Source: Kudoa neothunni
Taxonomy: Eukaryota > Animalia > Cnidaria
Direction: 5' to 3'
Assembly: GCA_964304625.1 (NCBI GenBank)
Contig: OZ199839.1
Coordinates: forward strand, 7,711,166-7,775,165
DNA: 64,000 bases
The notes beneath the pieces were generated by a model, which was not told the origin of the DNA, did no database searches, and was given only the letters and a program-made list of their open reading frames with translations. Positions 18,545 to 55,222 of the stretch are shown in pieces. Made by a program: the position numbers and the translations under genes. How positions within the stretch are numbered: the first letter of the stretch is position 1; every line of letters begins with the position of its first letter.

Positions 18545-18617
18545 GTCTCCATGGCGCAATAGGTAGCGCGTTCGGCTGTTAACCGGAAGGTTACGAGTTC
18601 GAACCTCGTTGGGGACG
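18545..18617 (+). tRNA. trnN-GUU: tRNA-Asn (GTT), intact, 73 nt
   Basis: Cloverleaf: acceptor GTCTCCA/TGGGGAC, D stem GCGC/GCGC, anticodon stem TTCGG/CCGGA with loop CT-GTT-AA, T arm ACGAG-TTCGAAC-CTCGT, discriminator G. A box and B box are present, followed by T5. Confidence 0.95.
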
Positions 18618-18620
18618 AAG

Positions 18621-18636
18621 TTTTTCGATTTTTTTT
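18621..18636 (+). terminator. Pol III terminator T-tracts of the tRNA gene
   Basis: TTTTT starts 3 nt after the discriminator, and T8 follows at 18629-18636. Confidence 0.7.
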
Positions 18637-18713
18637 GCGTAGCAAAAAAAGATCGAAGAACTTTTTCGTCCCAAGAAGTTGATCATAGTAACCGAAATTT
18701 AATTTTAATTGGA

Positions 18714-21700
18714 ATGAGCCGTGAATTGTTGACGTCGGATGTGATTGAGCAGGTTTCTGCTCATTCAATGTTGATTTCGACATATGCAAAGCTCTATTTG
18801 GACTGTCGTCGAAAGAAGAAGAGGTCGACTGCAATAAGCAAATGTGCCGCAGACTATTGCAGGTTCATTCAGCAGCAACGTTGCATAGTTGGTAGAAAGA
18901 GAGACCTTTCTCAGCGTGCCGACATGAGTTGCATAGCTCGATCGGTTGCGTTGTCCAAGGAGGACCAAAAGCTAGCCAACGCGAAGGAATGGACCCGCAA
19001 GAAGTTTGAGGAGTTTTGTGTGCATGTACAACATCATTTGAACAACAATACTCTTCTTGAAGAATTTGTTGATCCGAATGGTGTAGTAAAAGTCACCTCT
19101 AAACGACTTATAAAGCGCAGTGATATGGGATTCATAGATACTAGTGTGTGTGTTGATGGAGAAACTAGCGTTTGTTTGTTAGTAGCGGAGTCCACACAGC
19201 CAAATTTTAGTGAAAAACTGAAAAAAGATGTCTGTCGATTACCTGCTAATCCCTCTGATGAGCCAAAGGATGATTCTTTTTCCGCCCAAGTGCCAAAAGA
19301 AAGCGTTCCACTAATCATAGATGATCACTCTAAAGATGACCCGCGAAAGGATGATGATCCTTTGCCTGATACAATACATGTGAATAAGTCAACTCCAAAG
19401 AAGTGTAAAAGCTCACCTTTGGATCTTTCTGTTGCTTTTGAAGCTTTACAAACTTTTCAAACTTTGGGCAATACACCAACTATCATAAGTGACGACACGA
19501 GTCCGACAGAACCATCGGAAAGTAACTCGTTATCTAAAAGTTCGCAAAAAGGCTTAAATGACAAAAACAACATTAACAATATTAACAATATTAACTGTAT
19601 TAACTGTATTAACAACAGGAACGCTCGACCCAGTAGTCCAAAAAGTATGCATAATTTACTTAAAAGTAGTAATAAAGTAAAAAATAATAATATAGTAGCT
19701 AATAATAATAATAATAATAATTATAATTGTAATAACGGTAATAATAGAGATAATAACAATAATGTTAACTCTAAATTTAAAGCATTATTCACACATAATG
19801 ATTTAAATCTAGCTAATTTAATTAATGAAGATAGTTTCTTAATTAATGAAATAATTAACTCGGAAGAATCTGAGCGTTCGCAAGACGTTACCTTAATACC
19901 ATCGTTTGGACTTTTTAAACGAAGTATTCAAGTTTTGAGTAGCGACACTCAACAGACACAATCTTCCTTAACACCATTAATTTTAACTCAGAATGAAAAT
20001 TTGATTTTTAACAAGGAAACCATAGCAGAACTTAATAAACTTAATCCAGCACATGACACTAGTACCATCACAGTAAAACCGACTAATATTTGTGAAGCAT
20101 TTGAAAGCCGTTTACGTCCCGAAAATGTTTCAACGCAAGTAGTAGATTCTATTAAACTTAATTTTAACCCTAAAACACCAAAACTTTATGATTCAGATAA
20201 CTCTACTAATAATACCCAGAGTGATGACCGTGATGTCATCATGAAGGAGATTACTCCTACGCATTCTAATAATTCTAATAATTCTAATAATCTTAACAAC
20301 TTGAATAACTCTAATAGTCCTACTAAAAACAGTTCAAGTATCAACAGTAATTCAGATAATTCTAATTCTAATGATAATTCATTAAATTCTAACCAAAATC
20401 TACTAAATAACAATAATAATATTAATCCAACTGATGAAGATGTGCATGTAAACAACTTTTCAATTGATAACGCCCACGATAAACGTATCAACGTTAACAA
20501 TAGTGTAATTAATCTGTTTTCTCACAATAATAACGATCTTAATCACGCTACATCCGAGGATGTAAACGACTTTATAAATAACTCAATTAACTTGTCCTAT
20601 CAAAGTTTTAATCAACAACCACTAGGGGAAGCAGATTCATCCAACAATAGTCTAATTAATCTTAACTTAACATTAGAGAATAATGACTCTATAACTGGGA
20701 ATCTTAACATTAACATTCACAATAATTCTGCGCATCACTTAACGCAATTGAACAACTCTATTGGAAGTAATACTTTAACAATTAATGATGACAATGCGCC
20801 GACATCTAGCAATAATAACAACGACACTGATACTAACTTAAACAACACTATTGAGAACAATAATCAAACAACTAATAACAACGACCCTTACTTTGATTAT
20901 TATAATCGAAAATTAAATTTTGAAGAAAAAGCTAACATTTGCATAGAGGAGCTTAAACAAATTCTATGCAAGTTCAATCACGAGGATATGAATACTATCT
21001 ATGATAAATTTCTCTCGTTGGCAACTATTCACGCTAAAAATTTACATTATTTTAACACAATTCCTAATAAAAATCAAAAGAAAAAACAACCTACCGAACG
21101 CATTCCTAGCGCAGTTGCAAGTCAACCGATTAACTTAAACTCATCGTTTAACCCAGCTAATATTAATCTAAACTCTAACGACATTAATTTAAACTTCAGA
21201 TCGCAACCATTAAGCAATGATGCAAATGTCCTTCTAGAATCTAACCATAATCATCCTATGCATAGACGTCTAAGATCATTATTTAAATTTAACACTAAAC
21301 GCTGTGTGCGTGAAATCACAGAGGCAAAGCCTGTGTGGTGTCAAGCATCAGCTCAAGCTATTAAAACAAAATTAACATTAACACCTCCCGTATTACCTAA
21401 TTATGAAGATTTTAAAATCGAATTTGCAAAATACTTAACACATACAGTAGAACCTAGCCAAATTCCTCATTATAATGAATTTAATAATCCCAACTCTAAT
21501 AACACACAACAGGTAATAGAAATTGAAAAAGAGAATAACTATCATACAGATTCTAGTGAATATCAATCTAATTCAGACGATAATAATACCAATAAAAATA
21601 ACTCTAATATGCAATCTCAACTATACACTTCAGCAATTCCTTATTCTAATTTTAACATTTCAACATTAGATGTTAATGACGCCATAGTTAAAGCTAAAGC

Positions 21701-24041
21701 GGACACAAGCTCAGGGACAGACGGTATTCATATGAAGTTTTGGAAGAAACTTCCTGGTATGAGTACTGTTCTGGCCCCACTTTTCAACATTATCGTTAAG
21801 AGCGAGTCAGTACCAACTACTTGGTTAGAATCGCGTCTTATTCTTCTGCCAAAAAGTAATGAGCCCAATCCGAATGACACGAACGACTATAGGCCTATTT
21901 CAATCACACAGACCATTTATAGGATTTTTATGTCAATAATTAACACTAAAATTAGATTAATGGTTAATTTTTCACCTAGTCAAAAAGGTTTTATGCCCGG
22001 CGAAGGATGTGTTGAACATTCTTATGTCGTGCAGGAAATTCTTGATGATTGTCGACGTGGATCGAAACGACTCAGCGCTTGTTGGATTGACCTTCGAAAA
22101 GCGTTCGACACGGTGCCCCATTGGATAATTTTACATTTCTTAACAGAGAGTGAGGTCCCTAATTCAATTGTCAATCTAATCAAACACCTATACACTAATT
22201 CCTACTCTAAAATTAAAGATCATTTAGGACAAACCAATAACATTCTAATGAACGGTAGAGGAGTGAAACAAGGTTGCCCCTTGTCCCCTCTCCTTTTTAA
22301 TTTAGTCATAGACCCCTTTCTCTGCCTAATTGACCAATCCAAACTAGGCTTTAATCTTAGAGGAAATAACATTGGAGCTCTGTGTTATGCAGATGACATT
22401 GTTATTACCTCTAATAATACCAAAAACTGCCAAAAAATCCTCAACTATCTACACACCATCCTGGATCTATGCGATATGCGAGCTAATGTTAAAAAATGCG
22501 CTTCTCTCCAAGTCTCTTACAGATCTGGTAGACGAATTATTAACGACCCCAATATTCATATTAATCTAACTTTGAATAATGAATCAATTCCACCCTTGGA
22601 AGATTTCTATAAGTACTTAGGTACGAATAAAGATCTTTCCTCATTTAAGGATGTGCTTCCTCAGTTTAAAGAGTTTAAAGATAAGCTGATTAAAATTTCT
22701 AACAGTTACTTGTATCCCTACATGAAAGCCGAAATTTTAAGAACTTATCTCTATCCTATCTTAGATTATACATTAAAAACCAATTGTATTAGGATTGAAG
22801 ATTTACAAGCGCTAGACTCTTTAATACTTAAACATGTGCGCAAATGGTTCAGCCTTCCCCAATGCTCCACTACCTCATTCTTCTATACCCCTATTAAATT
22901 AGGAGGTCTAGGTTTAAAATCCATTACAGAAGACTTTCGCGCATTAAGATTAGCTTCGGCATTAACAGTCTTAAACAGCGAGGATGATCGTGTTGAACAA
23001 ATTGCGCAACAAACTCTCAAAACCATTGTAGCTAAACGTCACCCTAATACTAATGTCAATGAAATTACTAATATCCAAATAATTAATTTCCTCAACAGTG
23101 AATTTGACATCATTAACGCTAAGGATATCCGAAGCCTTTTATCGTCCGCAAGATTAAATAGAAAAGCACTCGATGTCGAACTAATTGATGCATCGAATAA
23201 TCTTAAAATTGAGCTTAATCCTGCCACTCTTTTAATTCCACCCAGCATTTTCCGCAATCGATTAACCGAACCCACAAAAATTAAATTATTACGTTGGCAT
23301 AACCAATGTAAGCAATTTAATAGATGGAAAGGTCAAATTGACCAAGGTAAAACTACCTCCAGCACTTCTAAAGATCCCGCCTCGAATACCTGGATACGAA
23401 ACGGACATATTAAAGTGTCTACGTGCCGTTTCGCTCTCCATGGTAGGATGAATCTGCTTCCAACGAAGGCTGTTCTTAAAAAAGTCAAAAAAGCGCCAGA
23501 TTCTAAATGTCGTCGTTGCAACTGCGAGCATGAAACTTTGGGTCATATCCTAAGTTCATGTAAGCACGGCACGAACTTAATCATGACTAGACATAATAAT
23601 GTTCTTAACTTTATACATTCTAAAATTAAACTACCAAAAAACTGGACTAGCTTTAAAGACATGAGCATTATTCCTAATTCTAATCGTCGCCCAGACTTAG
23701 TTCTAATCAATAGGAAAAAACATAAAGCTATAATTATTGATATAACTATTGCATATGAAAATGATCCCGTGCGATTAACTAGTGTGCGTGATGGTAAAAT
23801 AAATAAATACTTCCCAGAGAGACATACTCTAGAGAGACAAGGGCTAATTGTCTACTCAGGCGCATTAGTCTACGGTTCTTTAGGTAGTCATCTAGACTCC
23901 AATTTCGAATTTTATAAACTACTGGGTCTTAAGCGCAAAGCCATTAAACGCATTAAAAAGACTATTACAACAATGATTCTTGAGGATAGTCACACTATCT
24001 TTAAGAATCATGTTCGTAATAGTACTAACGTCATGCATTAA
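18714..24041 (+). CDS. Family A retrotransposon protein (N-terminal domain, Asn-rich linker, RT, CCHC knuckle, RLE), 1775 aa from first ATG
   Basis: SSGTDGI, YRPIS, QKGF, WIDLRKAFD, GVKQGCPLSPLLFN, YADD (22386-22397), YKYLG, GGLG, CRRC-x8-H-x4-C, RHN, RRPDLV...IIDITI...KINKY. The ORF track starts at TTG 18609; the first ATG is at 18714. Confidence 0.95.
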   Translation: MSRELLTSDVIEQVSAHSMLISTYAKLYLDCRRKKKRSTAISKCAADYCRFIQQQRCIVGRKRDLSQRADMSCIARSVALSKEDQKLANAKEWTRKKFEEFCVHVQHHLNNNTLLEEFVDPNGVVKVTSKRLIKRSDMGFIDTSVCVDGETSVCLLVAESTQPNFSEKLKKDVCRLPANPSDEPKDDSFSAQVPKESVPLIIDDHSKDDPRKDDDPLPDTIHVNKSTPKKCKSSPLDLSVAFEALQTFQTLGNTPTIISDDTSPTEPSESNSLSKSSQKGLNDKNNINNINNINCINCINNRNARPSSPKSMHNLLKSSNKVKNNNIVANNNNNNNYNCNNGNNRDNNNNVNSKFKALFTHNDLNLANLINEDSFLINEIINSEESERSQDVTLIPSFGLFKRSIQVLSSDTQQTQSSLTPLILTQNENLIFNKETIAELNKLNPAHDTSTITVKPTNICEAFESRLRPENVSTQVVDSIKLNFNPKTPKLYDSDNSTNNTQSDDRDVIMKEITPTHSNNSNNSNNLNNLNNSNSPTKNSSSINSNSDNSNSNDNSLNSNQNLLNNNNNINPTDEDVHVNNFSIDNAHDKRINVNNSVINLFSHNNNDLNHATSEDVNDFINNSINLSYQSFNQQPLGEADSSNNSLINLNLTLENNDSITGNLNINIHNNSAHHLTQLNNSIGSNTLTINDDNAPTSSNNNNDTDTNLNNTIENNNQTTNNNDPYFDYYNRKLNFEEKANICIEELKQILCKFNHEDMNTIYDKFLSLATIHAKNLHYFNTIPNKNQKKKQPTERIPSAVASQPINLNSSFNPANINLNSNDINLNFRSQPLSNDANVLLESNHNHPMHRRLRSLFKFNTKRCVREITEAKPVWCQASAQAIKTKLTLTPPVLPNYEDFKIEFAKYLTHTVEPSQIPHYNEFNNPNSNNTQQVIEIEKENNYHTDSSEYQSNSDDNNTNKNNSNMQSQLYTSAIPYSNFNISTLDVNDAIVKAKADTSSGTDGIHMKFWKKLPGMSTVLAPLFNIIVKSESVPTTWLESRLILLPKSNEPNPNDTNDYRPISITQTIYRIFMSIINTKIRLMVNFSPSQKGFMPGEGCVEHSYVVQEILDDCRRGSKRLSACWIDLRKAFDTVPHWIILHFLTESEVPNSIVNLIKHLYTNSYSKIKDHLGQTNNILMNGRGVKQGCPLSPLLFNLVIDPFLCLIDQSKLGFNLRGNNIGALCYADDIVITSNNTKNCQKILNYLHTILDLCDMRANVKKCASLQVSYRSGRRIINDPNIHINLTLNNESIPPLEDFYKYLGTNKDLSSFKDVLPQFKEFKDKLIKISNSYLYPYMKAEILRTYLYPILDYTLKTNCIRIEDLQALDSLILKHVRKWFSLPQCSTTSFFYTPIKLGGLGLKSITEDFRALRLASALTVLNSEDDRVEQIAQQTLKTIVAKRHPNTNVNEITNIQIINFLNSEFDIINAKDIRSLLSSARLNRKALDVELIDASNNLKIELNPATLLIPPSIFRNRLTEPTKIKLLRWHNQCKQFNRWKGQIDQGKTTSSTSKDPASNTWIRNGHIKVSTCRFALHGRMNLLPTKAVLKKVKKAPDSKCRRCNCEHETLGHILSSCKHGTNLIMTRHNNVLNFIHSKIKLPKNWTSFKDMSIIPNSNRRPDLVLINRKKHKAIIIDITIAYENDPVRLTSVRDGKINKYFPERHTLERQGLIVYSGALVYGSLGSHLDSNFEFYKLLGLKRKAIKRIKKTITTMILEDSHTIFKNHVRNSTNVMH

Positions 24042-24046
24042 AAATT

Positions 24047-24094
<48 letters not shown>

Positions 24095-24255
24095 TCAAAT
24101 TTTAATTAATTAATCTTAAAAATAACCTACAAATGTCTAAAAATCCAAAAAACAAGAATCCATCAAAAATTCAGCAATTTTCAGAAAACCCCAAAAATAA
24201 CATTAGCTAGTCAAAAACTTTTAGTGCTTTGTTAGTGGAAATATATTGTATTATT

Positions 24256-24291
24256 ACCGGAAGGTTACGAGTTCGAACCTCGTTGGGGACG
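24256..24291 (+). pseudogene. tRNA-Asn 3' half (nt 38-73), exact copy
   Basis: ACCGGAAGGTTACGAGTTCGAACCTCGTTGGGGACG is identical to 18582-18617 and is followed by AAGTTTTTTCGA. Confidence 0.95.
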
Positions 24292-24401
24292 AAGTTTTTT
24301 CGAGTTTTTTCTTGTACTCTGGAACAAAGTAATTATTTTAGCTCGCGTCTGCTATAGTTTAATTGGCCATTTGACAACAATTCTAACGATATATAAGTTT
24401 A

Positions 24402-27400
24402 ATGTCTTACGCCTCTTTTTCGACTAGCGACCTCTCGAGGTGTATGTACATGTACTATGCTGCGTATTTAAGAGCTGGAGGAAAGGGTAAAACCTTACCT
24501 CCACTTTGTAAATGCGTAGCAGAATATGTGCGCTGCATGGAGAGACTAAAAATGTACTCTACGAGACTAGATTCTATTGATAATGGTGTGACTTTTACCG
24601 CAGGTCAACGTAAACGCGTTTTAAACGCGATTTCTCGTAATGAGACATCGAGAGAGATCATCCTAGACAAGTTTATGCAACTTGTTCAAAATGCAATTGA
24701 CTCCAATGAATTCATTGAGCAATTTTTAGAGGAGGATGGATCCGTTTATGTTGACTCCAGCTTGCGTCTCTACCCAAAATTAAACCATAAATATTCAACT
24801 TATGTAAACTCTTTAAATAAAGCAAATGAATCTACCTCAAATAATGTAAACAATCAATTTCTTCATGAGAATAACCCATCGGCTAACTCCTATAATAACA
24901 CTAATACAACCAACTTCCATGATAATAACGGCATAGAAAATAAATTACCTGATACTCTTTATCCTAACGCCAATTATAACTCTATTTCTAACTCTAATTC
25001 GCTCGAATATGACGTAGTTGAAGTATCGTCGGCCCACGACGATATTGACGATGAATCAGCAGCGATAATTGACATCCATAAGGATTTACTTTCTAAACGT
25101 CCTAGCTCTAAAAACCATCTAACATCTAAAATTAAATACGCATCGCTAAATCCATCAGAGAAATTTGTTGTAATTGAAGAAGATAACAATGCATTAATTC
25201 ATCCACTTGATAATAATAATCCGATAGACAACCCCTCTGATGACTCGGTGCATGCATCCGATGATGACGATTGGTTATTTGAACACTTAAATCAACCTAT
25301 TTATAACTTAAATTACTCCCATAGCAATCGTTCGCCAATTGACACGTCGCCTAATGGTAATATTAAAACTAACGACCATGTCATTAACACTAACGACAAC
25401 ACTAACCTAACTAATGCTATTCATATCGATTCAATCTCTATATTAGACCTCTCTACTGCCCCTAGTGCTCGTAACAGTCCTAATATTAACATTGATTTAA
25501 ATCTCGATCCAATTTCTAAAAAACTTATTCGTGACATTATCACAATCTCTCCTAAGAATAACCATTATAATAATTGCTCACCAACTACTAGTCCTCTAAC
25601 ATCAAATTCTAACGAAGATGTAATATGCAATAATCCAACAAATAATGTTAATATCGATTCAACTGTTAATGATGACAATAACCCATTAAATGCGCAAACT
25701 AAAAATCCATTAACGATAAATGCCGACGCATCATCTATTAACAATACCACAAACGACTCTAATACAAAGTCATCTATTTCTAATCCTACCATTAACAATT
25801 CCAATTCTGCCATTAACAATTCCAATGCTACACATTTAAACAACTCTTCGACCGCAAATACTAAAAACGATGTTATGCGCAATCAGCCGACCACGACAAA
25901 CGGTAGAACAAGTGATACTCACTCCGATAATTCTACCAGGTCAAAATCAAACTTAACATTAAACCCCATTAAGCTGAATACAACGAACGCAAACTCAAGC
26001 AATATTAACCACCATAAAGCCGAGTCAGTAACATTTTCTACTGTGACTGACGATGACAGCACAACTTGTAACTTTCACATTGTGACTAATTCCACACTTA
26101 AAAAACCAAATATACTAATTGAAAATCCAAATAGTAGCAGTAATGATTTAAATAATATCTCAATTAACATAGCTAACAATTCTAAAAATAATATCACTAC
26201 TAATAATACTCGCTATAATCCCACTAGTTGTATCAACACTAGTGATGCCACCACTAATAATAACCAAAAAGATGAAAATAATGGTGATGCCATCCCCAAT
26301 ATTAGTAATACTGACAATATCATTGATAATAAAGATAATGAAAACACTAATAGAAATATGGTGGATGATGAAAATATTAATAATAATCTAGATACTCTAA
26401 ATAATAGTAATAATAATAATAAAATTCCGGTAACTAAAAATAAAATAAACTACTCTTCCGTCGCTAACCCTAACACAATTTCGAGCAATATAACTAATGT
26501 CTCCTTAATTTCTAACAATACTAAAAGCGATAATAATAATCAAACCTCTGACAATCAGTTGGATGATAATACCAAAGCTAAAATTAATTCTAATTCGAAC
26601 CCCAATTCTGCAAATTTAAATAGCCAGCCAAATTCTAAAGATTATAACAAGACATCTAAATCCCTCATTAATCAATCTAATTCTAAAAATGCCAATAACG
26701 AAATTAAACATGGCCCTATAAACCTAAATAACCACCCTAACTCTTACACGTCCCCCAACGAGAAGTTTGACGGACACAATCAGTTCCACGTATCAAATAT
26801 TCAGCCGACAAAAAGAAGACAAGTTAACCACAAATCACCTCCTAAATCCAAAATTATGAAAACTGAAGACTGCTCCCTGTCCAACCAACAAATATGCCAA
26901 ATCGATGAATTATCAATCCCACTAGATCTCAATACACAAGATATTGAAGAATTTATCTCAGAACAACGCACGAAGAATTTCCAAAATGAACAAACACAAA
27001 TAATCTCGGATTGCACCCCAAATTCCGATGAAACAGAAAAAACCACAAAATATCCCAACGTAACTGTGAATCCAAACTTCAAAATTGATATAAAGGACTT
27101 TGGAACCTCTAAGAACGACAAACAAATGCACCAACTCATGCGGCAATTGAAGAAAGCTAATCAAGACATCAACTCACCACTTTCATCAGAAACTGATCAA
27201 TCCACCGTTGAACAACAACAAACAGATTCTCAACCTATCTCCAGTGGCTACCAAGATGCCCCATCTACAAACGGAAATTCAAAATTCATCCCTGAAAACA
27301 TCTACTCACCATCTATGGGCTTAGACGCAATTTTCAACATAAAATCGGCGCTAAAACCAACTCCTAAAACTCCATCTTCAATTGAAACACAAAATAACAC

Positions 27401-30400
27401 AAACAAAAACTCTCTAATGGAAGATTCAATCAAATCCATTATACAAACCCATAAATCAAAAATTAACAACCCATTCCCCAAAGTCCAGACAAAACAACAC
27501 TTCATCCCTAATTCTAAAAAACAAATAAATGCCAACTTCCAATCGTCAAAAGATAATCCTACCCGCAACAATAAACCAAGCAGAAAATGCAAAAATCCTA
27601 ACCTAATTCCATATAATCAATCACACCCTCAAAATCCTCAAAATTCCCAAAAATCAAAAATACCTAACAACCACCTTGAGCTATCTGATATCGACACAAA
27701 CGGTGAATCAGACGATCTTCCCATCCGCCCTCCTAAAAATCCAAGCTCCAATCCTCCAACTGCCTCCAAACCCAATGAATCAATTATAAATCTAAGTAAA
27801 GGCATCCAATCCCAACCAAGTGCGAACGAACTGGAGAACCCACAAGCATTCACCCAAACTGAAATCCCTGACCAAAACTATCCTGACCTATATGACCAAA
27901 AATCAAAATTAAATGAAAAAGCCGAAGCATGTGTAAGGGAACTTCAAGCGCTTATGTGCAAAGCAAACGACATACCTGCAGATGAACTTTATAACGACTT
28001 CATCGCTCTGGCCACAGTTCAAGCACAATCCCTAAAAATGCACTACATTCCTAAATACAAACCCAGAACACCTCCCAAAAACATCAACAAAACAACAATA
28101 AACCCAGAAAATCCCCATTCTCAACCAAACACTAACCCTTCGCCTTCTTCTTCTTCCTCACCATCATCTTCTCAACATTCAAACTATCCTAACATTCAAT
28201 CTCAAAATACATCTCAACCCCAACACTCATCCAACCAACAGCAAGAATCATCAACAAACCCTTGGAATAACAAAGAAGCTAGACGTCTCCGCTCCCTCTT
28301 CAAATTAAACACGAAGAAATGCGTACGAGAAATAACTCAACCTATCCCTAAATGGTGTCAACTAACAGCCAACCAAATCTCAGAATCCCTCACCTTACCT
28401 CTGCCAACGGTTCCTGAATTATTTCAACAAGAACTACCAGACATTCCACAACACCTCATTGCAAACAAGATCTTCTCATCCACAAAATCACAATCTTCAC
28501 AGCAACCCACGACAAACTCACAAAGTAGTTTTCCAGCTCTCACCACTCAAGATACCAATCAAAACGACTTTGCCACTGACGAGGACGAATTCATAAACGA
28601 AGACTCCCAACACTCTAACAATAACTCCACAACAACTCCTCAACCAACAAATAACCCAAACAACCACCACAATCCGCAAGATGTATACCACTCCTCAATC
28701 CACTCTAACACACATCATCTCACCATGGACGAAGTGATGGCCGCTGTCTTCAAAGCAAAACAAGATACCAGTACCGGACCCGACGGCATCCAGATGAAAT
28801 TTTGGAAGAAACTTCCAAACATCTCTTCTGTGCTACATCCCTTGTTTAACAAAATTTTGGACAGTGGCAAAGTCCCCCAACAGTGGCTCTCATCAAGACT
28901 GGTTATGATTCCAAAAGAAGAAAACGCCAACACACTCTCAGCCGGCGACTATAGACCCATATGCATTACTCAATGTATATACCGAATCTTCATGTCCGCA
29001 GTCAACTCCCATCTAAAAGAGTTTATCACACTCTCACCCAACCAAAAGGGCTTCCAATCTGGAGATGGCTGCGTGGAACACTCCTTCATGCTCCAACAAA
29101 TTCTCGATGACCACCGCAACACAAAAAAGAGAAAGTCCCTGTATATACATTGGATAGACCTCAGAAAAGCTTTTGACCACGTTCCACACTGGATGATCCA
29201 CAATATGCTAAAGAAAAAAGATGTCCCTATCCAATACACCAACCTAATTGAACACCTATATGCCAACTCATATAATGTCATAAAAGACCAATACGGAAAC
29301 GTTGCCAATCACCATCTAAACGGAAGAGGAGTAAGACAAGGTTGCCCCCTCTCACCCGCACTTTTCAACTTGGTAATCGACCCTTATCTACGTCTCGCTG
29401 AAGAACTAGATGCCGGTTACAAACACGACAATACAGAAAATCCAATATCCGTCCTTGCTTATGCTGACGACCTAATTCTCATCTCAGACACGGCGGAAAA
29501 ATCGCAACTTCTTCTAGACAAACTCCAAGAATTCCTCCGACTCACAGACATGTCTGTCAACCTCAACAAATGCTCAACCCTCATCTCTTCGTATAAATAC
29601 GGACGTAGAATCATAAATGACCCCAAATTCCACCAACCACTCACTCTGTCCAACGATTCGATTCCATTTCTTGATGAACCCGGTTTCTATAAATACCTAG
29701 GTACAAACAAAAACCTCCAAACATTCCAAGACATTCAACCAGTGACCACAAAATTCACCCATCACCTAACAAAAGTGTCTGAATCCTTTTTATATCCCCA
29801 CATGAAACTACATATCCTCAAAATCTATCTACTACCAATGTTAGAATACACCATGAAAACCACCCAACTACGGATTGAAGATCTTAAAAGATTAGACGCC
29901 TTCGTGATCAAACACATTAAATCCTGGTATAACCTACCAAACTATACGAGCAAACCATTTTTCTCCACACCTTCCAAACTTGGCGGACTTGGCATTCGTA
30001 ATCTACAAGACGACTACAAAGCTCTACGGCTGTCATCTGTGATCTCACTGCTGAATAGCGACGATGACCGTATTGAACTGCTGGCTCAATCGACACTCAA
30101 AGCTGTAATCGACCGACGCCAATCCGAAGACAGGCCACTCTCTCCGATCGACTTTCTAAATCTTGACGACGCGATCCCCTCAAATATCACCATACGAGAT
30201 GTAAAATCAATCTTCACCACAATCCGCCTATACCGAAAATCCCTAAAAATCCAACTTATAAATAACTCCAACAACAACCAATACTCCATCAAGTTTGACG
30301 CCTCATCTCTGAAAAAACCCACTTGCGCCTTCCAAAATAGATTCCTCACCCCATCCAGAGTAAAACTCCTACGCTGGCACCTTCAACAACAATCATACGA

Positions 30401-31118
30401 AGAATGGTCCCAACAAGTCCTACAAGGCAACCACGTTGAAAGCATCTCCGCAGATAAAACCTCAAACTCTTGGATTACAAACGGCCAAATTAAAGTAACC
30501 TCGGCCAAGTTCTCCATCAAGGCGAGACTAAATATCTGCCCATCCAACCTCCACCTATACAAACTCAAACTAACCCCATCCCCAAGCTGCAGAAGATGCC
30601 CTGCCGATATTGAATCTATCGGACACATCATCAACGCATGTCCTTCTAACCTAAACCAAATAATGCATCGCCACAATAAAGTCCTGGACTTTATTTTCTC
30701 GAAAATAAAGCTCAAGAGAAACTGGGTGCTGTTCAAAGATCAAGAATTCCTCACCACGTCCTCAAGAAGACCGGATTTAGTACTGATCAATGAATTCTCA
30801 CACAAAGCAATACTGATAGATCTATCTATTCCCTTTGAAACATCGACTGAGAGGCTCATGCAGATTCGTGACAACAAAACAGACAAATACAACACAGAGA
30901 AAAACACACTAGAACAAATGCACTACGAGGTAAGTTGTTATGCGCTAGTATTTGGTTCTCTAGGTAGTCACATCAAATCCAACGAAGAGGTATACAAGCT
31001 CCTGGGTATACCAAAAAAGAAAATAAAGCGGCTAAAGAAATCCATCACGACCACCATCCTTGAAGAGAGTCATGCTATCTTCAAGGCCCACACCGCTGTC
31101 ACAAGCTCCCAACAATGA
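24402..31118 (+). CDS. Family B retrotransposon protein (2238 aa; RT, CCHC, RLE)
   Basis: STGPDGI, YRPI, QKGF, WIDLRKAFD, GVRQGCPLSPALFN, YADD (29460-29471), YKYLG, CRRC-x8-H-x4-C, RHN, RRPDLV..LIDLSI...KTDKY. Confidence 0.95.
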   Translation: MSYASFSTSDLSRCMYMYYAAYLRAGGKGKTLPPLCKCVAEYVRCMERLKMYSTRLDSIDNGVTFTAGQRKRVLNAISRNETSREIILDKFMQLVQNAIDSNEFIEQFLEEDGSVYVDSSLRLYPKLNHKYSTYVNSLNKANESTSNNVNNQFLHENNPSANSYNNTNTTNFHDNNGIENKLPDTLYPNANYNSISNSNSLEYDVVEVSSAHDDIDDESAAIIDIHKDLLSKRPSSKNHLTSKIKYASLNPSEKFVVIEEDNNALIHPLDNNNPIDNPSDDSVHASDDDDWLFEHLNQPIYNLNYSHSNRSPIDTSPNGNIKTNDHVINTNDNTNLTNAIHIDSISILDLSTAPSARNSPNINIDLNLDPISKKLIRDIITISPKNNHYNNCSPTTSPLTSNSNEDVICNNPTNNVNIDSTVNDDNNPLNAQTKNPLTINADASSINNTTNDSNTKSSISNPTINNSNSAINNSNATHLNNSSTANTKNDVMRNQPTTTNGRTSDTHSDNSTRSKSNLTLNPIKLNTTNANSSNINHHKAESVTFSTVTDDDSTTCNFHIVTNSTLKKPNILIENPNSSSNDLNNISINIANNSKNNITTNNTRYNPTSCINTSDATTNNNQKDENNGDAIPNISNTDNIIDNKDNENTNRNMVDDENINNNLDTLNNSNNNNKIPVTKNKINYSSVANPNTISSNITNVSLISNNTKSDNNNQTSDNQLDDNTKAKINSNSNPNSANLNSQPNSKDYNKTSKSLINQSNSKNANNEIKHGPINLNNHPNSYTSPNEKFDGHNQFHVSNIQPTKRRQVNHKSPPKSKIMKTEDCSLSNQQICQIDELSIPLDLNTQDIEEFISEQRTKNFQNEQTQIISDCTPNSDETEKTTKYPNVTVNPNFKIDIKDFGTSKNDKQMHQLMRQLKKANQDINSPLSSETDQSTVEQQQTDSQPISSGYQDAPSTNGNSKFIPENIYSPSMGLDAIFNIKSALKPTPKTPSSIETQNNTNKNSLMEDSIKSIIQTHKSKINNPFPKVQTKQHFIPNSKKQINANFQSSKDNPTRNNKPSRKCKNPNLIPYNQSHPQNPQNSQKSKIPNNHLELSDIDTNGESDDLPIRPPKNPSSNPPTASKPNESIINLSKGIQSQPSANELENPQAFTQTEIPDQNYPDLYDQKSKLNEKAEACVRELQALMCKANDIPADELYNDFIALATVQAQSLKMHYIPKYKPRTPPKNINKTTINPENPHSQPNTNPSPSSSSSPSSSQHSNYPNIQSQNTSQPQHSSNQQQESSTNPWNNKEARRLRSLFKLNTKKCVREITQPIPKWCQLTANQISESLTLPLPTVPELFQQELPDIPQHLIANKIFSSTKSQSSQQPTTNSQSSFPALTTQDTNQNDFATDEDEFINEDSQHSNNNSTTTPQPTNNPNNHHNPQDVYHSSIHSNTHHLTMDEVMAAVFKAKQDTSTGPDGIQMKFWKKLPNISSVLHPLFNKILDSGKVPQQWLSSRLVMIPKEENANTLSAGDYRPICITQCIYRIFMSAVNSHLKEFITLSPNQKGFQSGDGCVEHSFMLQQILDDHRNTKKRKSLYIHWIDLRKAFDHVPHWMIHNMLKKKDVPIQYTNLIEHLYANSYNVIKDQYGNVANHHLNGRGVRQGCPLSPALFNLVIDPYLRLAEELDAGYKHDNTENPISVLAYADDLILISDTAEKSQLLLDKLQEFLRLTDMSVNLNKCSTLISSYKYGRRIINDPKFHQPLTLSNDSIPFLDEPGFYKYLGTNKNLQTFQDIQPVTTKFTHHLTKVSESFLYPHMKLHILKIYLLPMLEYTMKTTQLRIEDLKRLDAFVIKHIKSWYNLPNYTSKPFFSTPSKLGGLGIRNLQDDYKALRLSSVISLLNSDDDRIELLAQSTLKAVIDRRQSEDRPLSPIDFLNLDDAIPSNITIRDVKSIFTTIRLYRKSLKIQLINNSNNNQYSIKFDASSLKKPTCAFQNRFLTPSRVKLLRWHLQQQSYEEWSQQVLQGNHVESISADKTSNSWITNGQIKVTSAKFSIKARLNICPSNLHLYKLKLTPSPSCRRCPADIESIGHIINACPSNLNQIMHRHNKVLDFIFSKIKLKRNWVLFKDQEFLTTSSRRPDLVLINEFSHKAILIDLSIPFETSTERLMQIRDNKTDKYNTEKNTLEQMHYEVSCYALVFGSLGSHIKSNEEVYKLLGIPKKKIKRLKKSITTTILEESHAIFKAHTAVTSSQQ

Positions 31119-31258
31119 AAACTCCATCCTCTAAAACGTCAAAACTATCAAAAATTCCACCCATAAAACAATCAACCCTTCATCGATCAACTCCAAAATA
31201 ACACAAACGTTACATTAGACTGAACTGTTTAGCTTTCGTAGCTTTATTTTGTATTATT

Positions 31259-31294
31259 ACCGGAAGGTTACGAGTTCGAACCTCGTTGGGGATG
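31259..31294 (+). pseudogene. tRNA-Asn 3' half (one mismatch, C72T)
   Basis: ACCGGAAGGTTACGAGTTCGAACCTCGTTGGGGATG. Confidence 0.9.
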
Positions 31295-31369
31295 ACGAAT
31301 CGTTGTTTATGCTCAATAACCAAAGTAATTAAATTAGTTCGCGATTGCTCACTTGATAACGATCCTAAC

Positions 31370-31727
31370 TATTGGGTATAGTGACCAACCGTACGATATC
31401 CGCCAAAAATCCGTAAACGATTTCAAGGGAACCAGAATTATCAGGAGGACCTACTCCGATTGCCAATAGAAGAGTAATGCGGTCAACCACAGAACGGTAC
31501 AAATCAAACGGGTAAAATTCACATAGGAATACCCAGAGATGAATGTACACATGTTCGGCAATCGGATGTAGGGTCCGCCTCATGGATGCGTTCTTTGGCC
31601 CTGCATTGAATCAGTTTTTGGCATCTCCCCATCACATATAATGCTACTTTTTACTAAAACTAGTATTCTTTTTTTTCGAGTCATTTTCATTTATTCTTTC
31701 TGCCGCGTGCACTCGAGGATAAACACA
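31370..31727. mobile_element. Solo LTR (358 bp) with 5-bp TSD
   Basis: Flanked by CTAAC (31365-31369 and 31728-31732) and ends ...AAACACA. Homologous to 60036-60208, which begins TGTTTGG. Confidence 0.75.
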
Positions 31728-34700
31728 CTAACGATATATAATTTTAATGTTCTACGCTTCTATTTCAACTAACGACCTCTCGAGATGTATGTACATGTAC
31801 TATGCTGCGTATTTAAGAGCTGGAGGAAAGGGTAAAACCTTACCTCCCACTTTGTAAAATGCGTAGCAGAGTATGTGCGCCGCATGGAGAGACTAAAAAT
31901 GTATTCTACAAGATTAAAATCTATAGATAATTGTGTGACTTTTACCGCAGGTCAACGAAAACGAGGTTTAAACGCAATTTCTCGTAATGAGACATCGAGA
32001 GAGATCATCCTAGACAAGTTTATGCAACTTGTTCAAAATGCAATTGACTCCAATGAATTCATTGAGCAATTTTTAGAGGAGGATGGATCCGTTTATGTGA
32101 CTCCAGCTTGCGTCTCTACCCAAAATTAAACCATAAATATTCAAATTATGTCAATTCTTTAAATAAATCCAATGAATCTACCTTAAATATTGTAAAAAAT
32201 CAATTTTCTTGTTAGAATACCTGAGGGATTCTGTTAAGATGAGTTAATGACCTTTATTTATCACTCATTAGAATCCCCAAGAGAGTAGTTAATTATGTCT
32301 TTATATAAAAACTATCATCTCAAAGTAGATTACTTGTATTTTTCTCATAATGTTACGAACACTAACTACAACAATTTTAACAATGGCGCATCGACTTCAA
32401 TAGAGGCCATCAACGGAGAGGAAGTTAAATCATGGATGTGGATATCAAAATTTGATCTCCTTTTATTACTTAAAGGCAGACCAGTCGGGAGATGGACTCT
32501 AAAACTATTAGTATCGTTATCTGGTAAAATATTCAAAATTGTTCAAGAAGCTGGATATAACATAAATTCAGTTTATGAAGATTTGAAATCTTATTTGATT
32601 ACCAGATTTGGTGAACATAAAGACAGTTATGTAGCCTTACGTGAATTCGCTGATTGCATACAAAAGACGAATCAAAGTTTGGTGGAAGTCGCTGAGGAAA
32701 TCCGACGTAAAGGGGAAGGATGCTTATGTAAATATGGATTCTTCCAGCTTGGATACAGTCCTAACAAATCAATTTATTCATGGAATCATTTTCGGACGAT
32801 ACCAGGAAAAATCTATGTAAAAGGGCCTGAAAATTTAGAACAGGCGTTCAATCTAGCCAAAAAATTGGAATATGCGTTACAAACAAATGGAAAGAACTGA
32901 AATTGAAATGGATTCTTCCGTAAACGTTTTAGCTACAATAATAAGGGATTCTGAATTGTTGAATCAATAATTAAAGATAATAAGTGCCTTGGAAGCAAAG
33001 AAAAAAGAAAGTTAATCGGTTCAGTTGTGGTAAACCTGGACATAGAAAAAATTGTTTGACCAAATCTTTTTCACAAGATAAATACTCTTGTCTTTTCTTT
33101 TTGTGCTGTGAAATTTGGGGTAAAATGGCTAAATCGTTGATTGATACTGGATCACAATCGTCTTAATGAAATATTCAATATTTAAATCACTTGTTTTAAT
33201 TAAATTGTCTAAATCTAATGAAAAAATATTTTCAGAAGGTGAACAAGAGGTTTATCTTATTGGAATTGCTGAATTGAACGTTATTGAGGGATTGAATAAT
33301 CGGTAGCAACAATTTATTGCATAACTGCATTTTTGGCATGGATGTCCCTCGAAAAATTGAATTTTAAAATGAACATTGTACAGAAGGAATTTGAATTGAG
33401 AAATAAATCTTCTAAGTCAATGTTGATAAAATGCAATGATCGTGATGAAAACAAACAAACTGATTTGATTCATCATAGAATAGATATTGGTGAGCATCTA
33501 CCAATTCGATATTTCAGATGAAGAATACCTCATCACAGAAAACCAATTATGGAGGAAATGATTAATATGTTAGAACGGGAATAATTGAAAACTCTACCAT
33601 CGAATGGGCTTCTAATGCCAATTTTTTCCAACGAAAAATGGGGAATTTCGATTGTGTATTGATTAAAGCAAGTTAAACATTACTGTTAATGATGTTTACC
33701 CTATACCACGTATACATGATATATTGGGATATGATTAATGGCTCTAAGTATTATAGTGTTTTGGATTTTAAAAGGTTATTATCAAATTCCAATTCATCCA
33801 AATGATAAAAAAAGACTGCATTTTATGGAGGTTAATGGTATATATATCAATATAAAATGATTCCATTTGGTCTATGTAACTCTCCGGCCACGTTCCAACG
33901 TTGTATGAATTATACATTGCGCGAATTTATTGGAAAGATACGTTTTTGTTTATTTGGATATATTATACTTGACAAGAGCCTGGAATTACACGAAAAGAAT
34001 GTCAAAGATATTATGGATACTTTAATTAGTGCTAATTTGAAAATTAATAGAGAACAATCAATATTTTTCAAAACCAATGTAAAAAATTCAAGGGTCACAT
34101 CATTGGTAACGACACAATTCAACCTGATTCCGAGAAAACGTAACTTATAAAAAATTTTCTGGCTCCTTCAATTGTAAAGGAATTACAAAGGTTTTTAGGT
34201 TTTGAAAATTAGTAATAGAAGGTTCGTTAAAGAATTCTCTACATTGGCAATTCCTATGTACGAGTTACTTGAAAAAGAAAACAAATAAGAATGGAGTAAA
34301 CAATGTGAGAATAGTTTTAACGCTCTTAAATCGTCGTTATTCAAATCGATCCAATCGAATATGCCCAATTTCAAATATTTATTTATACTCGATACTGACG
34401 CTAGCAATGAATCAATAGGAGGAATATTGTCCTAAATAGTTGATGGGAATTGAAAAACTGATTACATTTTCTAGTCGTTCATTACTGAACAGAGAGGAGA
34501 ATTACTGCATAACATGGAAAGAAATGCTGGCACTTGTAAATTTCATTAAATATTTTAAAACATATTTGATTGCAAAAAAAATTGCTGTGAGAACAGATCA
34601 TAATTCTCATAAATGGTTGTTATCATTTAAGAATTCCGAAGGTCAGGTAACAAGATGGTTGGAGCAACTCTCAGAATTTGATTTTGAAGTTGGCTATAGA

Positions 34701-42612: not shown

Positions 42613-42641
42613 ACTAGCCGTAATACCCGGTTACGCTAGGG
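42613..42641 (-). mobile_element. Helitron-like 3' terminus
   Basis: The minus strand reads CCCTAGCGTAACCGGGTATTACGGCTAG|T: a GC-rich hairpin followed by CTAG. Confidence 0.45.
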
Positions 42642-46697: not shown

Positions 46698-47675
46698 AAA
46701 ATTATTATTTCTATTGTGCGTTCACAAATCCAAATTTATATGATATTAAGATTACAATCTTGTTCTTTTGTTAGGAAACTCCCAATAAATAATCGAAACC
46801 TATATGTAATAAATGAACGACCATTAACTTGAGATGAAGTCACAATAATAAAATAATTATTGATTATATGTTTAGTCTTGCATATATATAAAAACTTGAA
46901 CCATATATATCAAATTAAATTTAGTATTTCACGTTATAACAACATGTATCAGCATTTACAATGATATATATATATATATATATATAAATCAACCTTTGAA
47001 AATAGAAACTACGTGACTATATTATAATCGAAATAGTATTAATTTATCAAAGTAATCTTGCTACATTCTAACGCATGCGAAGGTAGGTTAAAATGTAGAA
47101 TAGTGTTCACATTTTCCGATTAAGGATTATAATTTGTTCATAGATTAATCCTAAATTTTTTATAACAAATTTCCATGAAATATGTTGAACATTTATGGTA
47201 GGAATGAGCGGATTAATTATAATAAATTAATTTTTATGTTAACGTTATGCATTTGATACAATTTAACACCGAATGCTTGCAGGAAATATGAATATCTTAT
47301 ATTATAGACATGGAATTAATAATAGGCAATCGCTAAGGATGAAATATGACAATCAATAAAAAATCATAGTTGTCACACTCAAATTTTAGGATAAACAAAG
47401 CATGCTTTACTTCATCGATTAGATGGTATGGCCTATGGAAATAACTACGAGGGGCTAGCAGTTATGTAAAGAATATATTACAAAAACTATTATCGATAAC
47501 GAATACAGTGCCGAAAATAACCTACTGATGGTGAAACAATGATAAATACAAAAAATTGGAATAATCAACAGGTTCGATTTTTATCGTGGTCGCTGATTTG
47601 GATTACGGCCACTATTCTACATTTTAACCTATTTTTCTCATAATGTTATGAATACTAACTACAACAATCTTAACA

Positions 47676-48572
47676 TTTCTCATAAGGATAATCCATCGGT
47701 TAATTCCACTAATAACATTAATACAGCAAATTATCATGATAAAAATGACGTTGAAAATAAATTACCTGATACTTTACATTCTAACTCCAACTATAATTCT
47801 AATTCGCCTGAATATGACGTAGTTGAAGTACCGTCGGTCCACGACGACTCTGACGATGTGTCGGCAGCGATAATTGATATTCATAATGATTTACTATCTA
47901 AACGTCCTAATTCTAAAAATCATTTAACATCTAAAATTAAATACGCATCGTTAAATCCTTCAGAGAAATTTGTTATAATTGGAGAAGATAGTAATGCATT
48001 AATTCATCCACTTGCTAATAATAATCCGATCGATAATCCTTCTGATGATTCGGTGCGTGTATCCGATGATGACAATTGGTTGTTTGAACACTTAAATCAA
48101 CCTATTTATAACTTAAATTACTCTCATAACAATCGTTCGCCAATTCACACATCATCTAATGGTAATATTAAAATTAATGACCTTGTCATTAACACTAATG
48201 GTAACGCTAATTTAACTAATGTTGTTCATATTGATTCAATTTCTGTATTAGATCTCTCTTCTGCCCCTAGTGCTCGTAATAGTTCTAATATTAACATTAA
48301 TTTAAATCTCGATCCAATTTTTAAAAAACCTATTCGTGACCTTGTCACAATCTCTCCTAATAATAATCACCCTAGTTATAATAATTGTTCACCAACTACT
48401 AGTCCTTTAACATCAAATTCTGATGTAGATGCAATGTGCAATAATTCAATAAATAATGTTAATATTGATTCAAATGTTTGCGATCGTAATAACCCATTAA
48501 ATGCGCAAATTAACAATTCATTAACGATATGTGCTGACATGTCATTTGTTGACAATGTCACAAACGACTCTA
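47676..48572 (+). pseudogene. Continuation of family B copy B' (Asn-rich region)
   Basis: ORF 47648-48682 aligns to about aa 154-455 of the family B protein (ENKLPDTL, SAAIIDIH, WLFEHLNQPIY). It resumes exactly where 32209 broke off. Confidence 0.9.
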
Positions 48573-55187: not shown

Positions 55188-55222
55188 AACGAAGGTTACT
55201 AGTTCGAACCCCTTTGAGGACG
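55188..55222 (+). pseudogene. Degenerate tRNA-Asn 3' half
   Basis: AACGAAGGTTACTAGTTCGAACCCCTTTGAGGACG; the B-box core GTTCGAACC is kept. Confidence 0.8.

What the first reader, a model, noticed from the sequence alone, without database searches (positions are those of the whole stretch)
18545..31294. tRNA-Asn-specific RLE retrotransposons that regenerate their own target
Seen: the order is intact tRNA-Asn, element A, tRNA 3' half (24256), element B, tRNA 3' half (31259), element B'. The same junction recurs at 55188. All three surviving 3' ends (...TGTATTATT) abut the tRNA anticodon loop, and all four surviving 5' ends start with the tRNA 3' half. Known: RLE-type non-LTR elements are often site-specific (R2 in 28S rDNA, NeSL/CRE in spliced-leader genes, Utopia in U2 snRNA), and a few target tRNA genes; I do not recall one described for tRNA-Asn. 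Inference: insertion rebuilds a complete tRNA upstream, as phage attP integration does. This could come from a long (~36-47 bp) TSD or from the tRNA half being part of the element RNA. Either way the insertion costs the host no tRNA and the site can be reused indefinitely.
Basis: partly seen in the sequence, partly recalled or inferred. Interest (0 to 1): 0.92.

Follow-up and report, generated by a model that had tools for sequence, protein, structure and literature searches.

The report
Retrotransposons that rebuild their tRNA target
Two related jumping genes sit one behind the other in this small animal genome's apparently only tRNA-Asn gene, and each insertion duplicates the back half of the tRNA plus its stop signal, so the gene stays whole; the same trick is used at ten or more other tRNA genes here and in other species.

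Summary
An intact tRNA-Asn(GTT) gene (18545-18617) is followed head to tail by element A (to 24255), element B (to 31258) and a broken B' (from 31259). An older, decayed A''/B'' junction lies at 55187. Every 3' end stops at the same motif and abuts tRNA position 38. Every 5' end is preceded by the 36-nt tRNA 3' half plus a T-rich trailer.

A and B each encode one long ORF with a reverse transcriptase, a CCHC knuckle and a restriction-like endonuclease homologous to solved R2 proteins.

The finding is one case of a wider system. At least 16 of 18 RT-bearing places in this 40-Mb genome lie just downstream of a tRNA gene. Eleven such places were read. Ten tRNA kinds were identified as targets (Asn, Gln, two Lys, Trp, Ser, Thr, Cys, Phe here; initiator-like elsewhere), all with the same architecture. 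Other first-stage notes and one follow-up of this scan saw the same thing on other DNA of this genome.

Related contigs from other organisms carry A-like, B-like, Gln-type and Lys-type elements with the same junctions.

The likeliest mechanism is staggered nicking that gives a target duplication of roughly 48-56 bp. An RNA-carried half or trailer is not excluded.

tRNA-targeting NeSL-like elements are known (Kojima & Jurka 2015). I found no description of the target-rebuilding design or of a radiation of this size.

The parts
18545..18617 (+). Intact head tRNA-Asn(GTT) gene, the rebuilt target
   Evidence: ARAGORN; Rfam RF00005 at 66.2 bits. It is the only copy of this sequence in the genome.
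18618..18636 (+). T-rich trailer with two oligo-T runs; inferred RNA polymerase III terminator, kept between the tRNA and element A
   Evidence: Sequence read. A near-identical trailer precedes B at 24292-24310.
18612..18672 (+). Long hairpin: the tRNA 3' end plus trailer pairs with an A-rich arm at the 5' end of element A
   Evidence: RNAfold gives dG -32.2 and z -5.5. There are weak hairpin-type Rfam hits. The arm pairs best with its own trailer, and the A-like element of another species has a matching arm for its own, different trailer.
18637..24255 (+). Element A body (5' UTR, ORF, 3' UTR); ORF from the ATG at 18714 to the stop at 24041
18714..19115 (+). Family-specific N-terminal domain of A (helical hairpin; no zinc finger or Myb)
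   Evidence: Alignment A1. AF2 model with pLDDT 77. No fold match. No Pfam hit.
21867..22508 (+). Reverse transcriptase domain of A
   Evidence: Pfam RVT_1, E 6e-34.
23367..24038 (+). CCHC zinc knuckle and restriction-like endonuclease (PD..D..K) of A
   Evidence: Pfam zf-RVT. Motifs read. The homologous region of B aligns to the R2 endonuclease domain.
24246..24255 (+). Conserved 3' terminal motif of A (TTGTATTATT), abutting tRNA position 38
24256..24291 (+). tRNA-Asn 3' half, copy 1 (36/36 identical to the head gene)
24292..24310 (+). Trailer copy preceding B (two differences from the head trailer)
24311..31258 (+). Element B body; ORF 24402-31118 (2238 aa); RT 28908-29591; CCHC/RLE 30453-31115
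   Evidence: Matches solved R2 proteins over both RT and RLE (9nl3_A, E 5.7e-72).
31259..31294 (+). tRNA-Asn 3' half, copy 2 (one mismatch)
31295..32219 (+). B' 5' fragment with a different trailer; interrupted
   Evidence: blastn to B, 92.5% over 493 nt.
47675..48573 (+). Continuation of B' after about 15 kb of nested insertions
   Evidence: blastn to B 24857-25762, 84.6%.
53485..55187 (+). A'' 3' part (93.8% to A), cut upstream by another retroelement
55188..55222 (+). Decayed tRNA-Asn 3' half, copy 3
55223..55541 (+). B'' 5' fragment (83% to B)
61737..63942 (+). Older A-like RT fragment (77% to A)

Best explanation
A and B are two sister lineages of a clade of single-ORF non-LTR retrotransposons of the R2/NeSL supergroup (RT plus CCHC plus restriction-like endonuclease). 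They are site-specific for the tRNA-Asn(GTT) gene.

Shown:
- Each element's 3' end is joined to tRNA position 38, on the 3' side of the anticodon loop. This is the signature of a bottom-strand nick there, followed by target-primed reverse transcription.
- Each element is preceded by the tRNA 3' half plus a T-rich trailer, so an intact gene with its terminator stands upstream.
- Only the head copy stays perfect, while internal halves decay.

Inferred:
- The second (top-strand) nick falls about 48-56 bp downstream, just past the tRNA end and its oligo-T terminator.
- Repair of the staggered cut then duplicates the 3' half plus terminator as a long target-site duplication.
- The rebuilt gene is again a target. 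Later insertions stack upstream of older ones, and unequal recombination between the repeats can expand, shrink or delete the array.

The same design serves sister lineages at ten or more other tRNA genes of this genome and in other species.
For: Domains and homology.

Junctions: all 3 in the window and about 25 more in 8 further arrays join a conserved element end to tRNA positions 36-40, followed by 34-45 nt of tRNA, a trailer with two T runs, and the next element.

Linkage to tRNA genes: 16 of 18 RT-bearing places have a tRNA gene 2-7 kb upstream on the same strand.

Heritable specificity: A and B are sisters (SH-aLRT 98) and the four Gln subfamilies form one clade. Relatives from other organisms fall inside these clades and carry the same tRNA junctions.

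The duplication is target-derived:
- Within each species, A-type and B-type elements are preceded by nearly the same trailer, about 19-22 nt long.
- That trailer is unrelated between the two species, although the A/B split predates the species split.
- The head gene's 5' half is never duplicated.

Precedents: an exceptionally long TSD is reported for rotifer R9 (Gladyshev & Arkhipova 2009, title cited in PMC5035012 and PMC13580325). Overlapping 5' and 3' flanks of planarian LIN15_SM in tRNA-Arg are shown in the supplement of PMC4640811.

Selection on the head only: internal halves carry mismatches or an insertion at 31259 and 55188, in the Lys-CTT Q units and in the second Thr copy.
Against: No empty site, no polymorphic insertion and no nick mapping is available, so the top-strand nick is inferred.

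The head trailer and the trailer before B differ at 2 of 19 positions, while the 36-nt tRNA part is identical.

B' and B'' share a trailer unlike that of B.

Small trailer variants follow the type of the element behind them in the Lys-TTT array. Two trailer types are interleaved in the Gln array.

In several lineages the trailer is one arm of a conserved, covarying hairpin with the element's 5' end. That suggests the trailer is functionally part of the element.

No 5'-truncated copy was seen, which is unusual for TPRT elements.

Many units are 99-100% identical, so part of the stacking may be DNA-level duplication.

RNA and read evidence could not be obtained.
Confidence: 0.62

Rival explanations
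1. The tRNA 3' half and/or the trailer is part of the element's RNA, either co-transcribed from the donor locus or released from a tRNA-element co-transcript. It is reverse-transcribed with the element. The 5' junction then forms by blunt joining, or by annealing of the cDNA end to the target, so the rebuilt gene's back half comes from the donor.
For: Trailer micro-variants track the following element type in the Lys-TTT array (5 of 6 units).

Interleaved v1/v2 trailers in the Gln array come with matching variants at the tRNA 3' end.

A trailer-to-5'-arm hairpin is conserved, and each arm fits its own trailer best in two species.

Trailer differences occur next to identical tRNA halves at the A/B junction.

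An earlier follow-up of this scan on the Lys-CTT array reached this reading (not independent evidence).
Against: Trailers cluster by species or locus, not by element lineage. A and B share one trailer in each of two species although they split before those species did.

In the Gln array the same trailer precedes three different subfamilies, and one subfamily is found with both trailers.

No ribozyme or other known processing RNA was found at the 5' ends.

A precise RNA 5' end at tRNA position 38 has no known source.
Confidence: 0.25
2. Only one or a few true insertions occurred per locus. The arrays grew mainly by unequal crossing-over or replication slippage between the repeated tRNA halves and elements, so the site is not reused again and again.
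For: Units in the Gln array are 100% identical over 5595 bp. Units are 99.4-99.7% identical in the Lys-TTT array. A repeated P-Q pair occurs in the Lys-CTT array. The Cys element has a broken ORF and a 99.4% identical partial copy behind it.
Against: Different lineages share one site: A and B are only 50% identical in protein. There are two unrelated lineages at Lys-TTT and four subfamilies at Gln.

The same A-like/B-like co-occupation is seen in another species.

This rival explains copy number, not the junctions. It complements the main explanation rather than replacing it.
Confidence: 0.3
3. The element really inserts just downstream of the tRNA's first oligo-T run. It carries the tRNA half at its own 3' end through read-through transcription into the next half, and primes on the A run of the nicked terminator.
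For: Every unit is followed by a half plus a T run that could end a transcript. Annealing of read-through 3' tails to the target is known for R1/R2-type elements (own knowledge).
Against: In the Lys-TTT array the trailer variants correlate with the downstream element, not the upstream one.

The conserved 3' stem-loop and terminal motif sit directly at the junction in all lineages, as expected for the true RNA 3' end.
Confidence: 0.06
4. The array is an assembly artefact.
For: Repeats of 5-7 kb are hard to assemble. The read check failed.
Against: A and B are quite different sequences with unique junction contexts.

Four runs of one sample hold 48-94% of the stretch's words.

The same architecture appears in independent assemblies of other organisms.
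Confidence: 0.02

Closest known systems
tRNA-gene-specific NeSL-related elements: NeSL-1_TV (tRNA-Pro, Trichomonas), LIN15_SM (tRNA-Arg) and LIN25_SM (tRNA-Glu, planarian); Kojima & Jurka 2015, PMC4640811
   Same: RLE-type non-LTR elements inserted at a fixed site inside tRNA genes. LIN15_SM ends in a similar T/A-rich motif that begins like the one here. Its 5' and 3' flanks overlap by tens of bases, so it too makes a long duplication.
   Different: LIN15_SM enters 5' of the anticodon stem. Its 5' junction lies inside the T arm, so the upstream tRNA copy is truncated, not rebuilt.

Only single families are described, in a supplementary figure. No radiation over many tRNAs, no terminator-inclusive duplication and no arrays headed by an intact gene are reported.

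Sequence relationship was not testable here.
R2 (28S rDNA-specific) and its solved proteins (e.g. 9nl3, 9dou, 8gh6)
   Same: Single ORF. RT, CCHC and RLE are homologous along their whole length. Site-specific TPRT into a conserved RNA gene.
   Different: The target is a tRNA gene. There are no N-terminal zinc fingers or Myb; a helical domain stands there instead. No HDV-like ribozyme was detected. R2 inactivates the rDNA unit it enters, whereas this one restores its target.
R9 of bdelloid rotifers (Gladyshev & Arkhipova 2009, Gene 448:145)
   Same: [quoted passage not shown] It is a precedent for widely staggered nicks.
   Different: Its target is 28S rDNA. The duplication is not known to preserve gene function. 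The length I recall (126 bp) is from my own knowledge; only the title was seen here.
Phage and integrative-element attP/attB integration into tRNA genes
   Same: The mobile element supplies or duplicates the 3' part of the tRNA, so the gene stays functional and the site can be reused.
   Different: That is recombinase-mediated DNA integration in bacteria. Here it is TPRT by an RT/endonuclease in an animal genome.
Dictyostelium TRE elements and yeast Ty3 (targeting via the Pol III machinery); Dada DNA transposons in tRNA genes (PMC3706591)
   Same: They use tRNA genes as safe or multicopy landing sites.
   Different: TRE and Ty3 land outside the gene, read the transcription complex, and are not specific for one tRNA species. 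Dada are DNA transposons with 6-7-bp TSDs that split the gene.

Membership tests
RLE-bearing non-LTR retrotransposons (R2/NeSL/CRE supergroup) | Reverse transcriptase of the non-LTR type in a single long ORF | tested here: met
   RVT_1 at E 6e-34 and 4e-32. The RT aligns to R2 and, more weakly, to LINE-1 ORF2p structures.
RLE-bearing non-LTR retrotransposons (R2/NeSL/CRE supergroup) | CCHC knuckle plus PD-(D/E)XK restriction-like endonuclease C-terminal to the RT; no APE domain | tested here: met
   The second aligned stretch matches the R2 C-terminal domain, query 596-823. The motifs are visible. There is no Exo_endo_phos hit.
RLE-bearing non-LTR retrotransposons (R2/NeSL/CRE supergroup) | Site-specific insertion with a fixed 3' junction | tested here: met
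   All junctions read in 11 arrays lie at tRNA positions 36-40.
R2 clade proper | Insertion at the conserved 28S rDNA site | tested here: not met
   The target is tRNA-Asn. A true R2 recovered as an outgroup (L023) sits in 28S.
R2 clade proper | N-terminal C2H2 zinc finger(s) and Myb DNA-binding motifs | tested here: not met
   No Pfam hit in the N-terminal 500-550 aa. The conserved N-terminal domain folds as a helical hairpin without a PDB match.
R2 clade proper | 5' HDV-like self-cleaving ribozyme | tested here: inconclusive
   No Rfam ribozyme at E<=1 in 17500-20250 or 20300-33000. Divergent ribozymes could be missed.
NeSL clade | Ulp1/C48 cysteine protease domain upstream of the RT | tested here: not met
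   No PF02902 hit in A or B, whereas outgroup proteins P0013 and P0015 carry it.
NeSL clade | RT phylogeny placing it with NeSL-1/LIN/Utopia reference sequences | not testable with these tools
   No Repbase references were at hand. With unnamed database relatives the clade is a long separate branch in a polytomy with R2-like and protease-bearing groups.
Utopia | U2 snRNA gene target and an RNase H domain | tested here: not met
   The target is a tRNA. There is no RNase H Pfam hit.
Pol III-complex-guided tRNA targeting (TRE, Ty3) | Insertion at a set distance outside any tRNA gene, irrespective of tRNA species | tested here: not met
   Insertion is inside the gene. Each lineage keeps one tRNA species across deep divergence and across species.

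The most novel reading that the evidence does not exclude
Target choice or 5'-junction formation is partly RNA-guided. The A-rich arm at the 5' end of the element RNA is complementary to the top strand of the target at the tRNA 3' end plus terminator, exactly where the second nick is inferred, and it covaries with that trailer between species.

If the arm (or a carried tRNA half) pairs with the target, it could position second-strand cleavage or the template jump. Part of the specificity of this clade would then be written in RNA. That would help explain how one clade spread over ten or more tRNA genes while keeping the same geometry, and would make retargeting conceivable.
Probability: 0.18. 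Interest if true: 0.9.

Novelty: new variant of a known kind. Interest (0 to 1): 0.72.

Why it matters
Site-specific retrotransposons are usually thought to survive by hitting redundant multicopy genes and sacrificing the copy they enter. Here the targets appear to be low- or single-copy essential genes. The tRNA-Asn sequence occurs once in 40 Mb.

The element avoids harm by duplicating the 3' half together with the Pol III terminator. This is a retrotransposon counterpart of phage integration into tRNA genes.

It shows a second way to be a harmless site-specific retroelement. It explains self-renewing landing pads and arrays. It also gives a natural series of related RT/endonuclease proteins aimed at many different short DNA targets with one geometry.

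Such a series is useful for learning how RLE elements read and change targets. That question is central to current efforts to use R2-type proteins for gene insertion.

Tried and rejected
There is therefore no read or RNA evidence.

Genome letters. I could not read six further tRNA-linked places, the two RT places without a listed tRNA (C1 about 3.00 Mb, C2 about 1.82 Mb), or the trailers of unoccupied tRNA genes.

Ribozymes. A known ribozyme at the 5' ends was looked for and not found.

N-terminal domain. A DNA-binding fold was looked for. The AF2 model is confident, but Foldseek against the PDB gave only generic helical hairpins.

tRNA-like junctions. A tRNA-like fold of the element 3' end plus the following half was rejected, because ARAGORN calls no tRNA at internal junctions.

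Intron site. A single nick position at the canonical tRNA intron site (37/38) for all lineages was rejected. The junctions range from 36/37 (Gln) to 39/40 (Trp).

Placement in the tree. P0018 as nearest relative was rejected. It is a long branch and a true 28S R2.

Host. HSP70 gives at most 78% identity, to arthropods and other animals, so the host is an animal without a close relative in the protein database. Run labels are coded.
Full report
**Observation**

The window holds one tRNA gene, tRNA-Asn(GTT), at 18545-18617. Two intact long ORFs follow on the same strand: 18714-24041 (A) and 24402-31118 (B).

The last 36 nt of the tRNA recur exactly at 24256-24291 and with one mismatch at 31259-31294. 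A decayed copy lies at about 55188-55222. Each copy is preceded by the same short element end (TTGTATTATT). Each is followed by a T-rich trailer and an element 5' region.

Genome-wide, the 3'-half probe hits only these places and the 5'-half probe hits only the head gene. A reversed control pattern hits nothing.

There are three refinements:
- B' is a 5' fragment (31259-32219) that resumes at 47675-48573 after about 15 kb of nested insertions.
- A'' (53485-55187, 94% to A) is cut by the end of another retroelement.
- A further A-like RT remnant lies at 61737-63942.

**What the elements are**

Both ORFs carry RVT_1 and a C-terminal zinc knuckle. The last 839 aa of B align to solved R2 proteins over both the RT and the C-terminal CCHC/restriction-like endonuclease domain (9nl3_A, E 5.7e-72).

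No apurinic-type endonuclease, RNase H, Ulp1 protease, C2H2 finger or Myb motif is detected. The conserved N-terminal domain of about 130 aa, shared by all lineages, is predicted as a long helical hairpin (pLDDT 77). It has no convincing structural match.

No Rfam ribozyme lies at the 5' ends.

The 3' UTRs of most lineages share a 4-5-bp stem-loop 10-20 nt before the conserved terminal motif.

**Scale**

The RT/RLE of A finds 66 matches in about 18 places of the 40.3-Mb, four-contig assembly, mostly in tandem. For 16 of these places an Infernal tRNA hit lies 2-7 kb upstream on the same strand. These make up 16 of the 38 best tRNA hits.

I read eleven places (window, L001-L020). Each array is headed by an intact tRNA: Asn, Gln-TTG, Lys-TTT, Lys-CTT, Trp, Ser-AGA, Thr-TGT and Cys. 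A Phe-like half and one unidentified half were also seen.

Every internal junction joins an element end to tRNA positions 36-40. It keeps 34-39 nt of the tRNA (45 nt for the long-armed Ser) plus a trailer with two oligo-T runs.

Other first-stage notes of this scan describe the Cys, Lys and Phe arrays, and one follow-up treats the Lys-CTT array. This finding is thus the Asn instance of a system the scan has met before on other DNA of the same genome.

**Phylogeny and other species**

All elements from this genome form one strongly supported clade on a long stem. A and B, only 50% identical, are sisters (SH-aLRT 98). Four Gln subfamilies form one clade. Lys-TTT is occupied by two unrelated lineages.

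An exhaustive HMMER search of 1.8 billion representatives found only six proteins at 41-49% identity to B; the next hits are at 31%. Their contigs come from other assemblies and show the same design:
- L026 (ENA metagenome) has B-like, A-like and B-like units joined by the 3' half of another species' tRNA-Asn. That half has a T stem changed by compensatory substitutions, and the junction is the same.
- L024 has a Gln-type element with the same junction as here.
- L027 has a tRNA-Lys half at both ends.
- L029 is a contig filed under the fish Muraenolepis orangiensis, possibly a contaminant. It has three tandem units joined by a half with an initiator-type T loop.

In the tree these proteins fall next to the lineages that share their target. 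Target specificity is therefore old and heritable.

**Mechanism**

The fixed 3' junction fits a bottom-strand nick on the 3' side of the anticodon loop followed by target-primed reverse transcription. This inference rests on the established R2 mechanism.

The repeat upstream of each element could be a long target-site duplication or could be carried in the RNA.

Evidence for a target-derived duplication:
- In each of two species, the A-type and B-type elements are preceded by nearly the same 19-22-nt trailer.
- The trailers of the two species are unrelated, although A and B split before the species did.
- In the Gln array one trailer precedes three subfamilies.
- An exceptionally long TSD is reported for R9. 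The planarian tRNA-Arg element LIN15_SM has overlapping flanks.

Evidence for some RNA contribution:
- Trailer micro-variants follow the element type in the Lys-TTT array.
- Two trailer types alternate in the Gln array.
- The trailers before A and B differ at two positions next to identical tRNA halves.
- In A, in the A-like element of the other species, and in the Lys-TTT, Lys-CTT and L027 lineages, the trailer plus the tRNA 3' end pairs with an A-rich arm at the element's 5' end. For A this gives dG -32 and z -5.5. Each arm fits its own trailer best, at -30 against -23 and -16 kcal/mol.

I rate staggered nicks with a duplication of roughly 48-56 bp as most likely. A carried trailer or half is a serious rival. 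Unequal recombination is a likely contributor to array size, because many units are 99-100% identical.

**Consequences**

The duplicated block contains the whole 3' half and the terminator. The upstream gene is therefore complete, and only it stays perfect while internal halves decay. The rebuilt gene can be hit again, and the direct repeats allow gain and precise loss of units.

The tRNA-Asn sequence occurs once in the genome. The element thus lives in what looks like an essential single-copy gene.

**Known versus new**

tRNA-gene-specific NeSL-related elements are on record for tRNA-Pro, Arg and Glu (PMC4640811). The kind is therefore known.

In the held literature I found no description of the following:
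- insertion at the anticodon loop with a duplication that restores the gene and its terminator;
- arrays headed by the intact gene;
- a clade spread over ten or more tRNA species.

The inventory of Fell et al., mentioned in PMC13580325, is not held and was not checked.

**Limits**

- No reads could be laid.
One step, a degenerate search for divergent tRNA-Asn genes, was left out.
- The host is an animal without a close relative in the protein database.

Noticed in passing
Arrays in L013, L014, L018, L010/L011; window 31259-32219: Every array read to its downstream end finishes in a 5' fragment of an element (about 225-930 nt after the last tRNA half) rather than in a 5'-truncated copy. No 5'-truncated unit was seen anywhere. 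In the window the fragment is explained by a nested insertion; elsewhere it is unexplained.
   Followed up: partly
window 32220-47674: About 15 kb of foreign sequence splits B'. The two B' pieces overlap by 17 nt of B coordinates (24857-24873), possibly the target duplication of the inserted element(s).
   Followed up: no
window 53200-53484: The end of another retroelement, with an integrase-like C-terminal coding region and a terminal repeat end, abuts and truncates the A'' copy.
   Followed up: no
window 24049-24089: An uninterrupted A run of about 40 nt lies inside the 3' UTR of element A, 166 nt before the true 3' end. The older A'' copy has a much shorter run at the same place (about 55005-55013).
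   Followed up: no
window 4758-5486 and 8140-8574 (minus strand): ORFs resembling MULE/FAR1-type and piggyBac-type transposases lie upstream of the tRNA. The whole neighbourhood is transposon-rich.
   Followed up: no
window 24340-24350, 31335-31345, 55270-55280; L009, L017, L020 element 5' ends: A CGCG-containing motif sits shortly after the trailer in many element 5' regions. Other notes of the scan propose a CGCG box as a core promoter element of this genome.
   Followed up: no
window 18545-31294 and 53485-55541; L026: A-type and B-type elements alternate (A-B here twice; B-like, A-like, B-like in the other species). This could be chance, a higher-order repeat unit, or a dependence between the two lineages.
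   Followed up: partly
L029-L031 (GCA_027704905.1, contig JANIIK010003181.1): Three tandem units of a related element, joined by a tRNA half with an initiator-type T loop, lie on a 12.8-kb contig deposited under the fish Muraenolepis orangiensis. Whether the contig is fish DNA or DNA of an associated small animal is open.
   Followed up: partly
L025 3540-3600: In a related metagenome contig the stop codon of one Gln-type element is followed directly by the 5' UTR of the next, with no 3' UTR or tRNA half. This may be a deletion, a recombinant or an assembly chimera.
   Followed up: no
   Followed up: no
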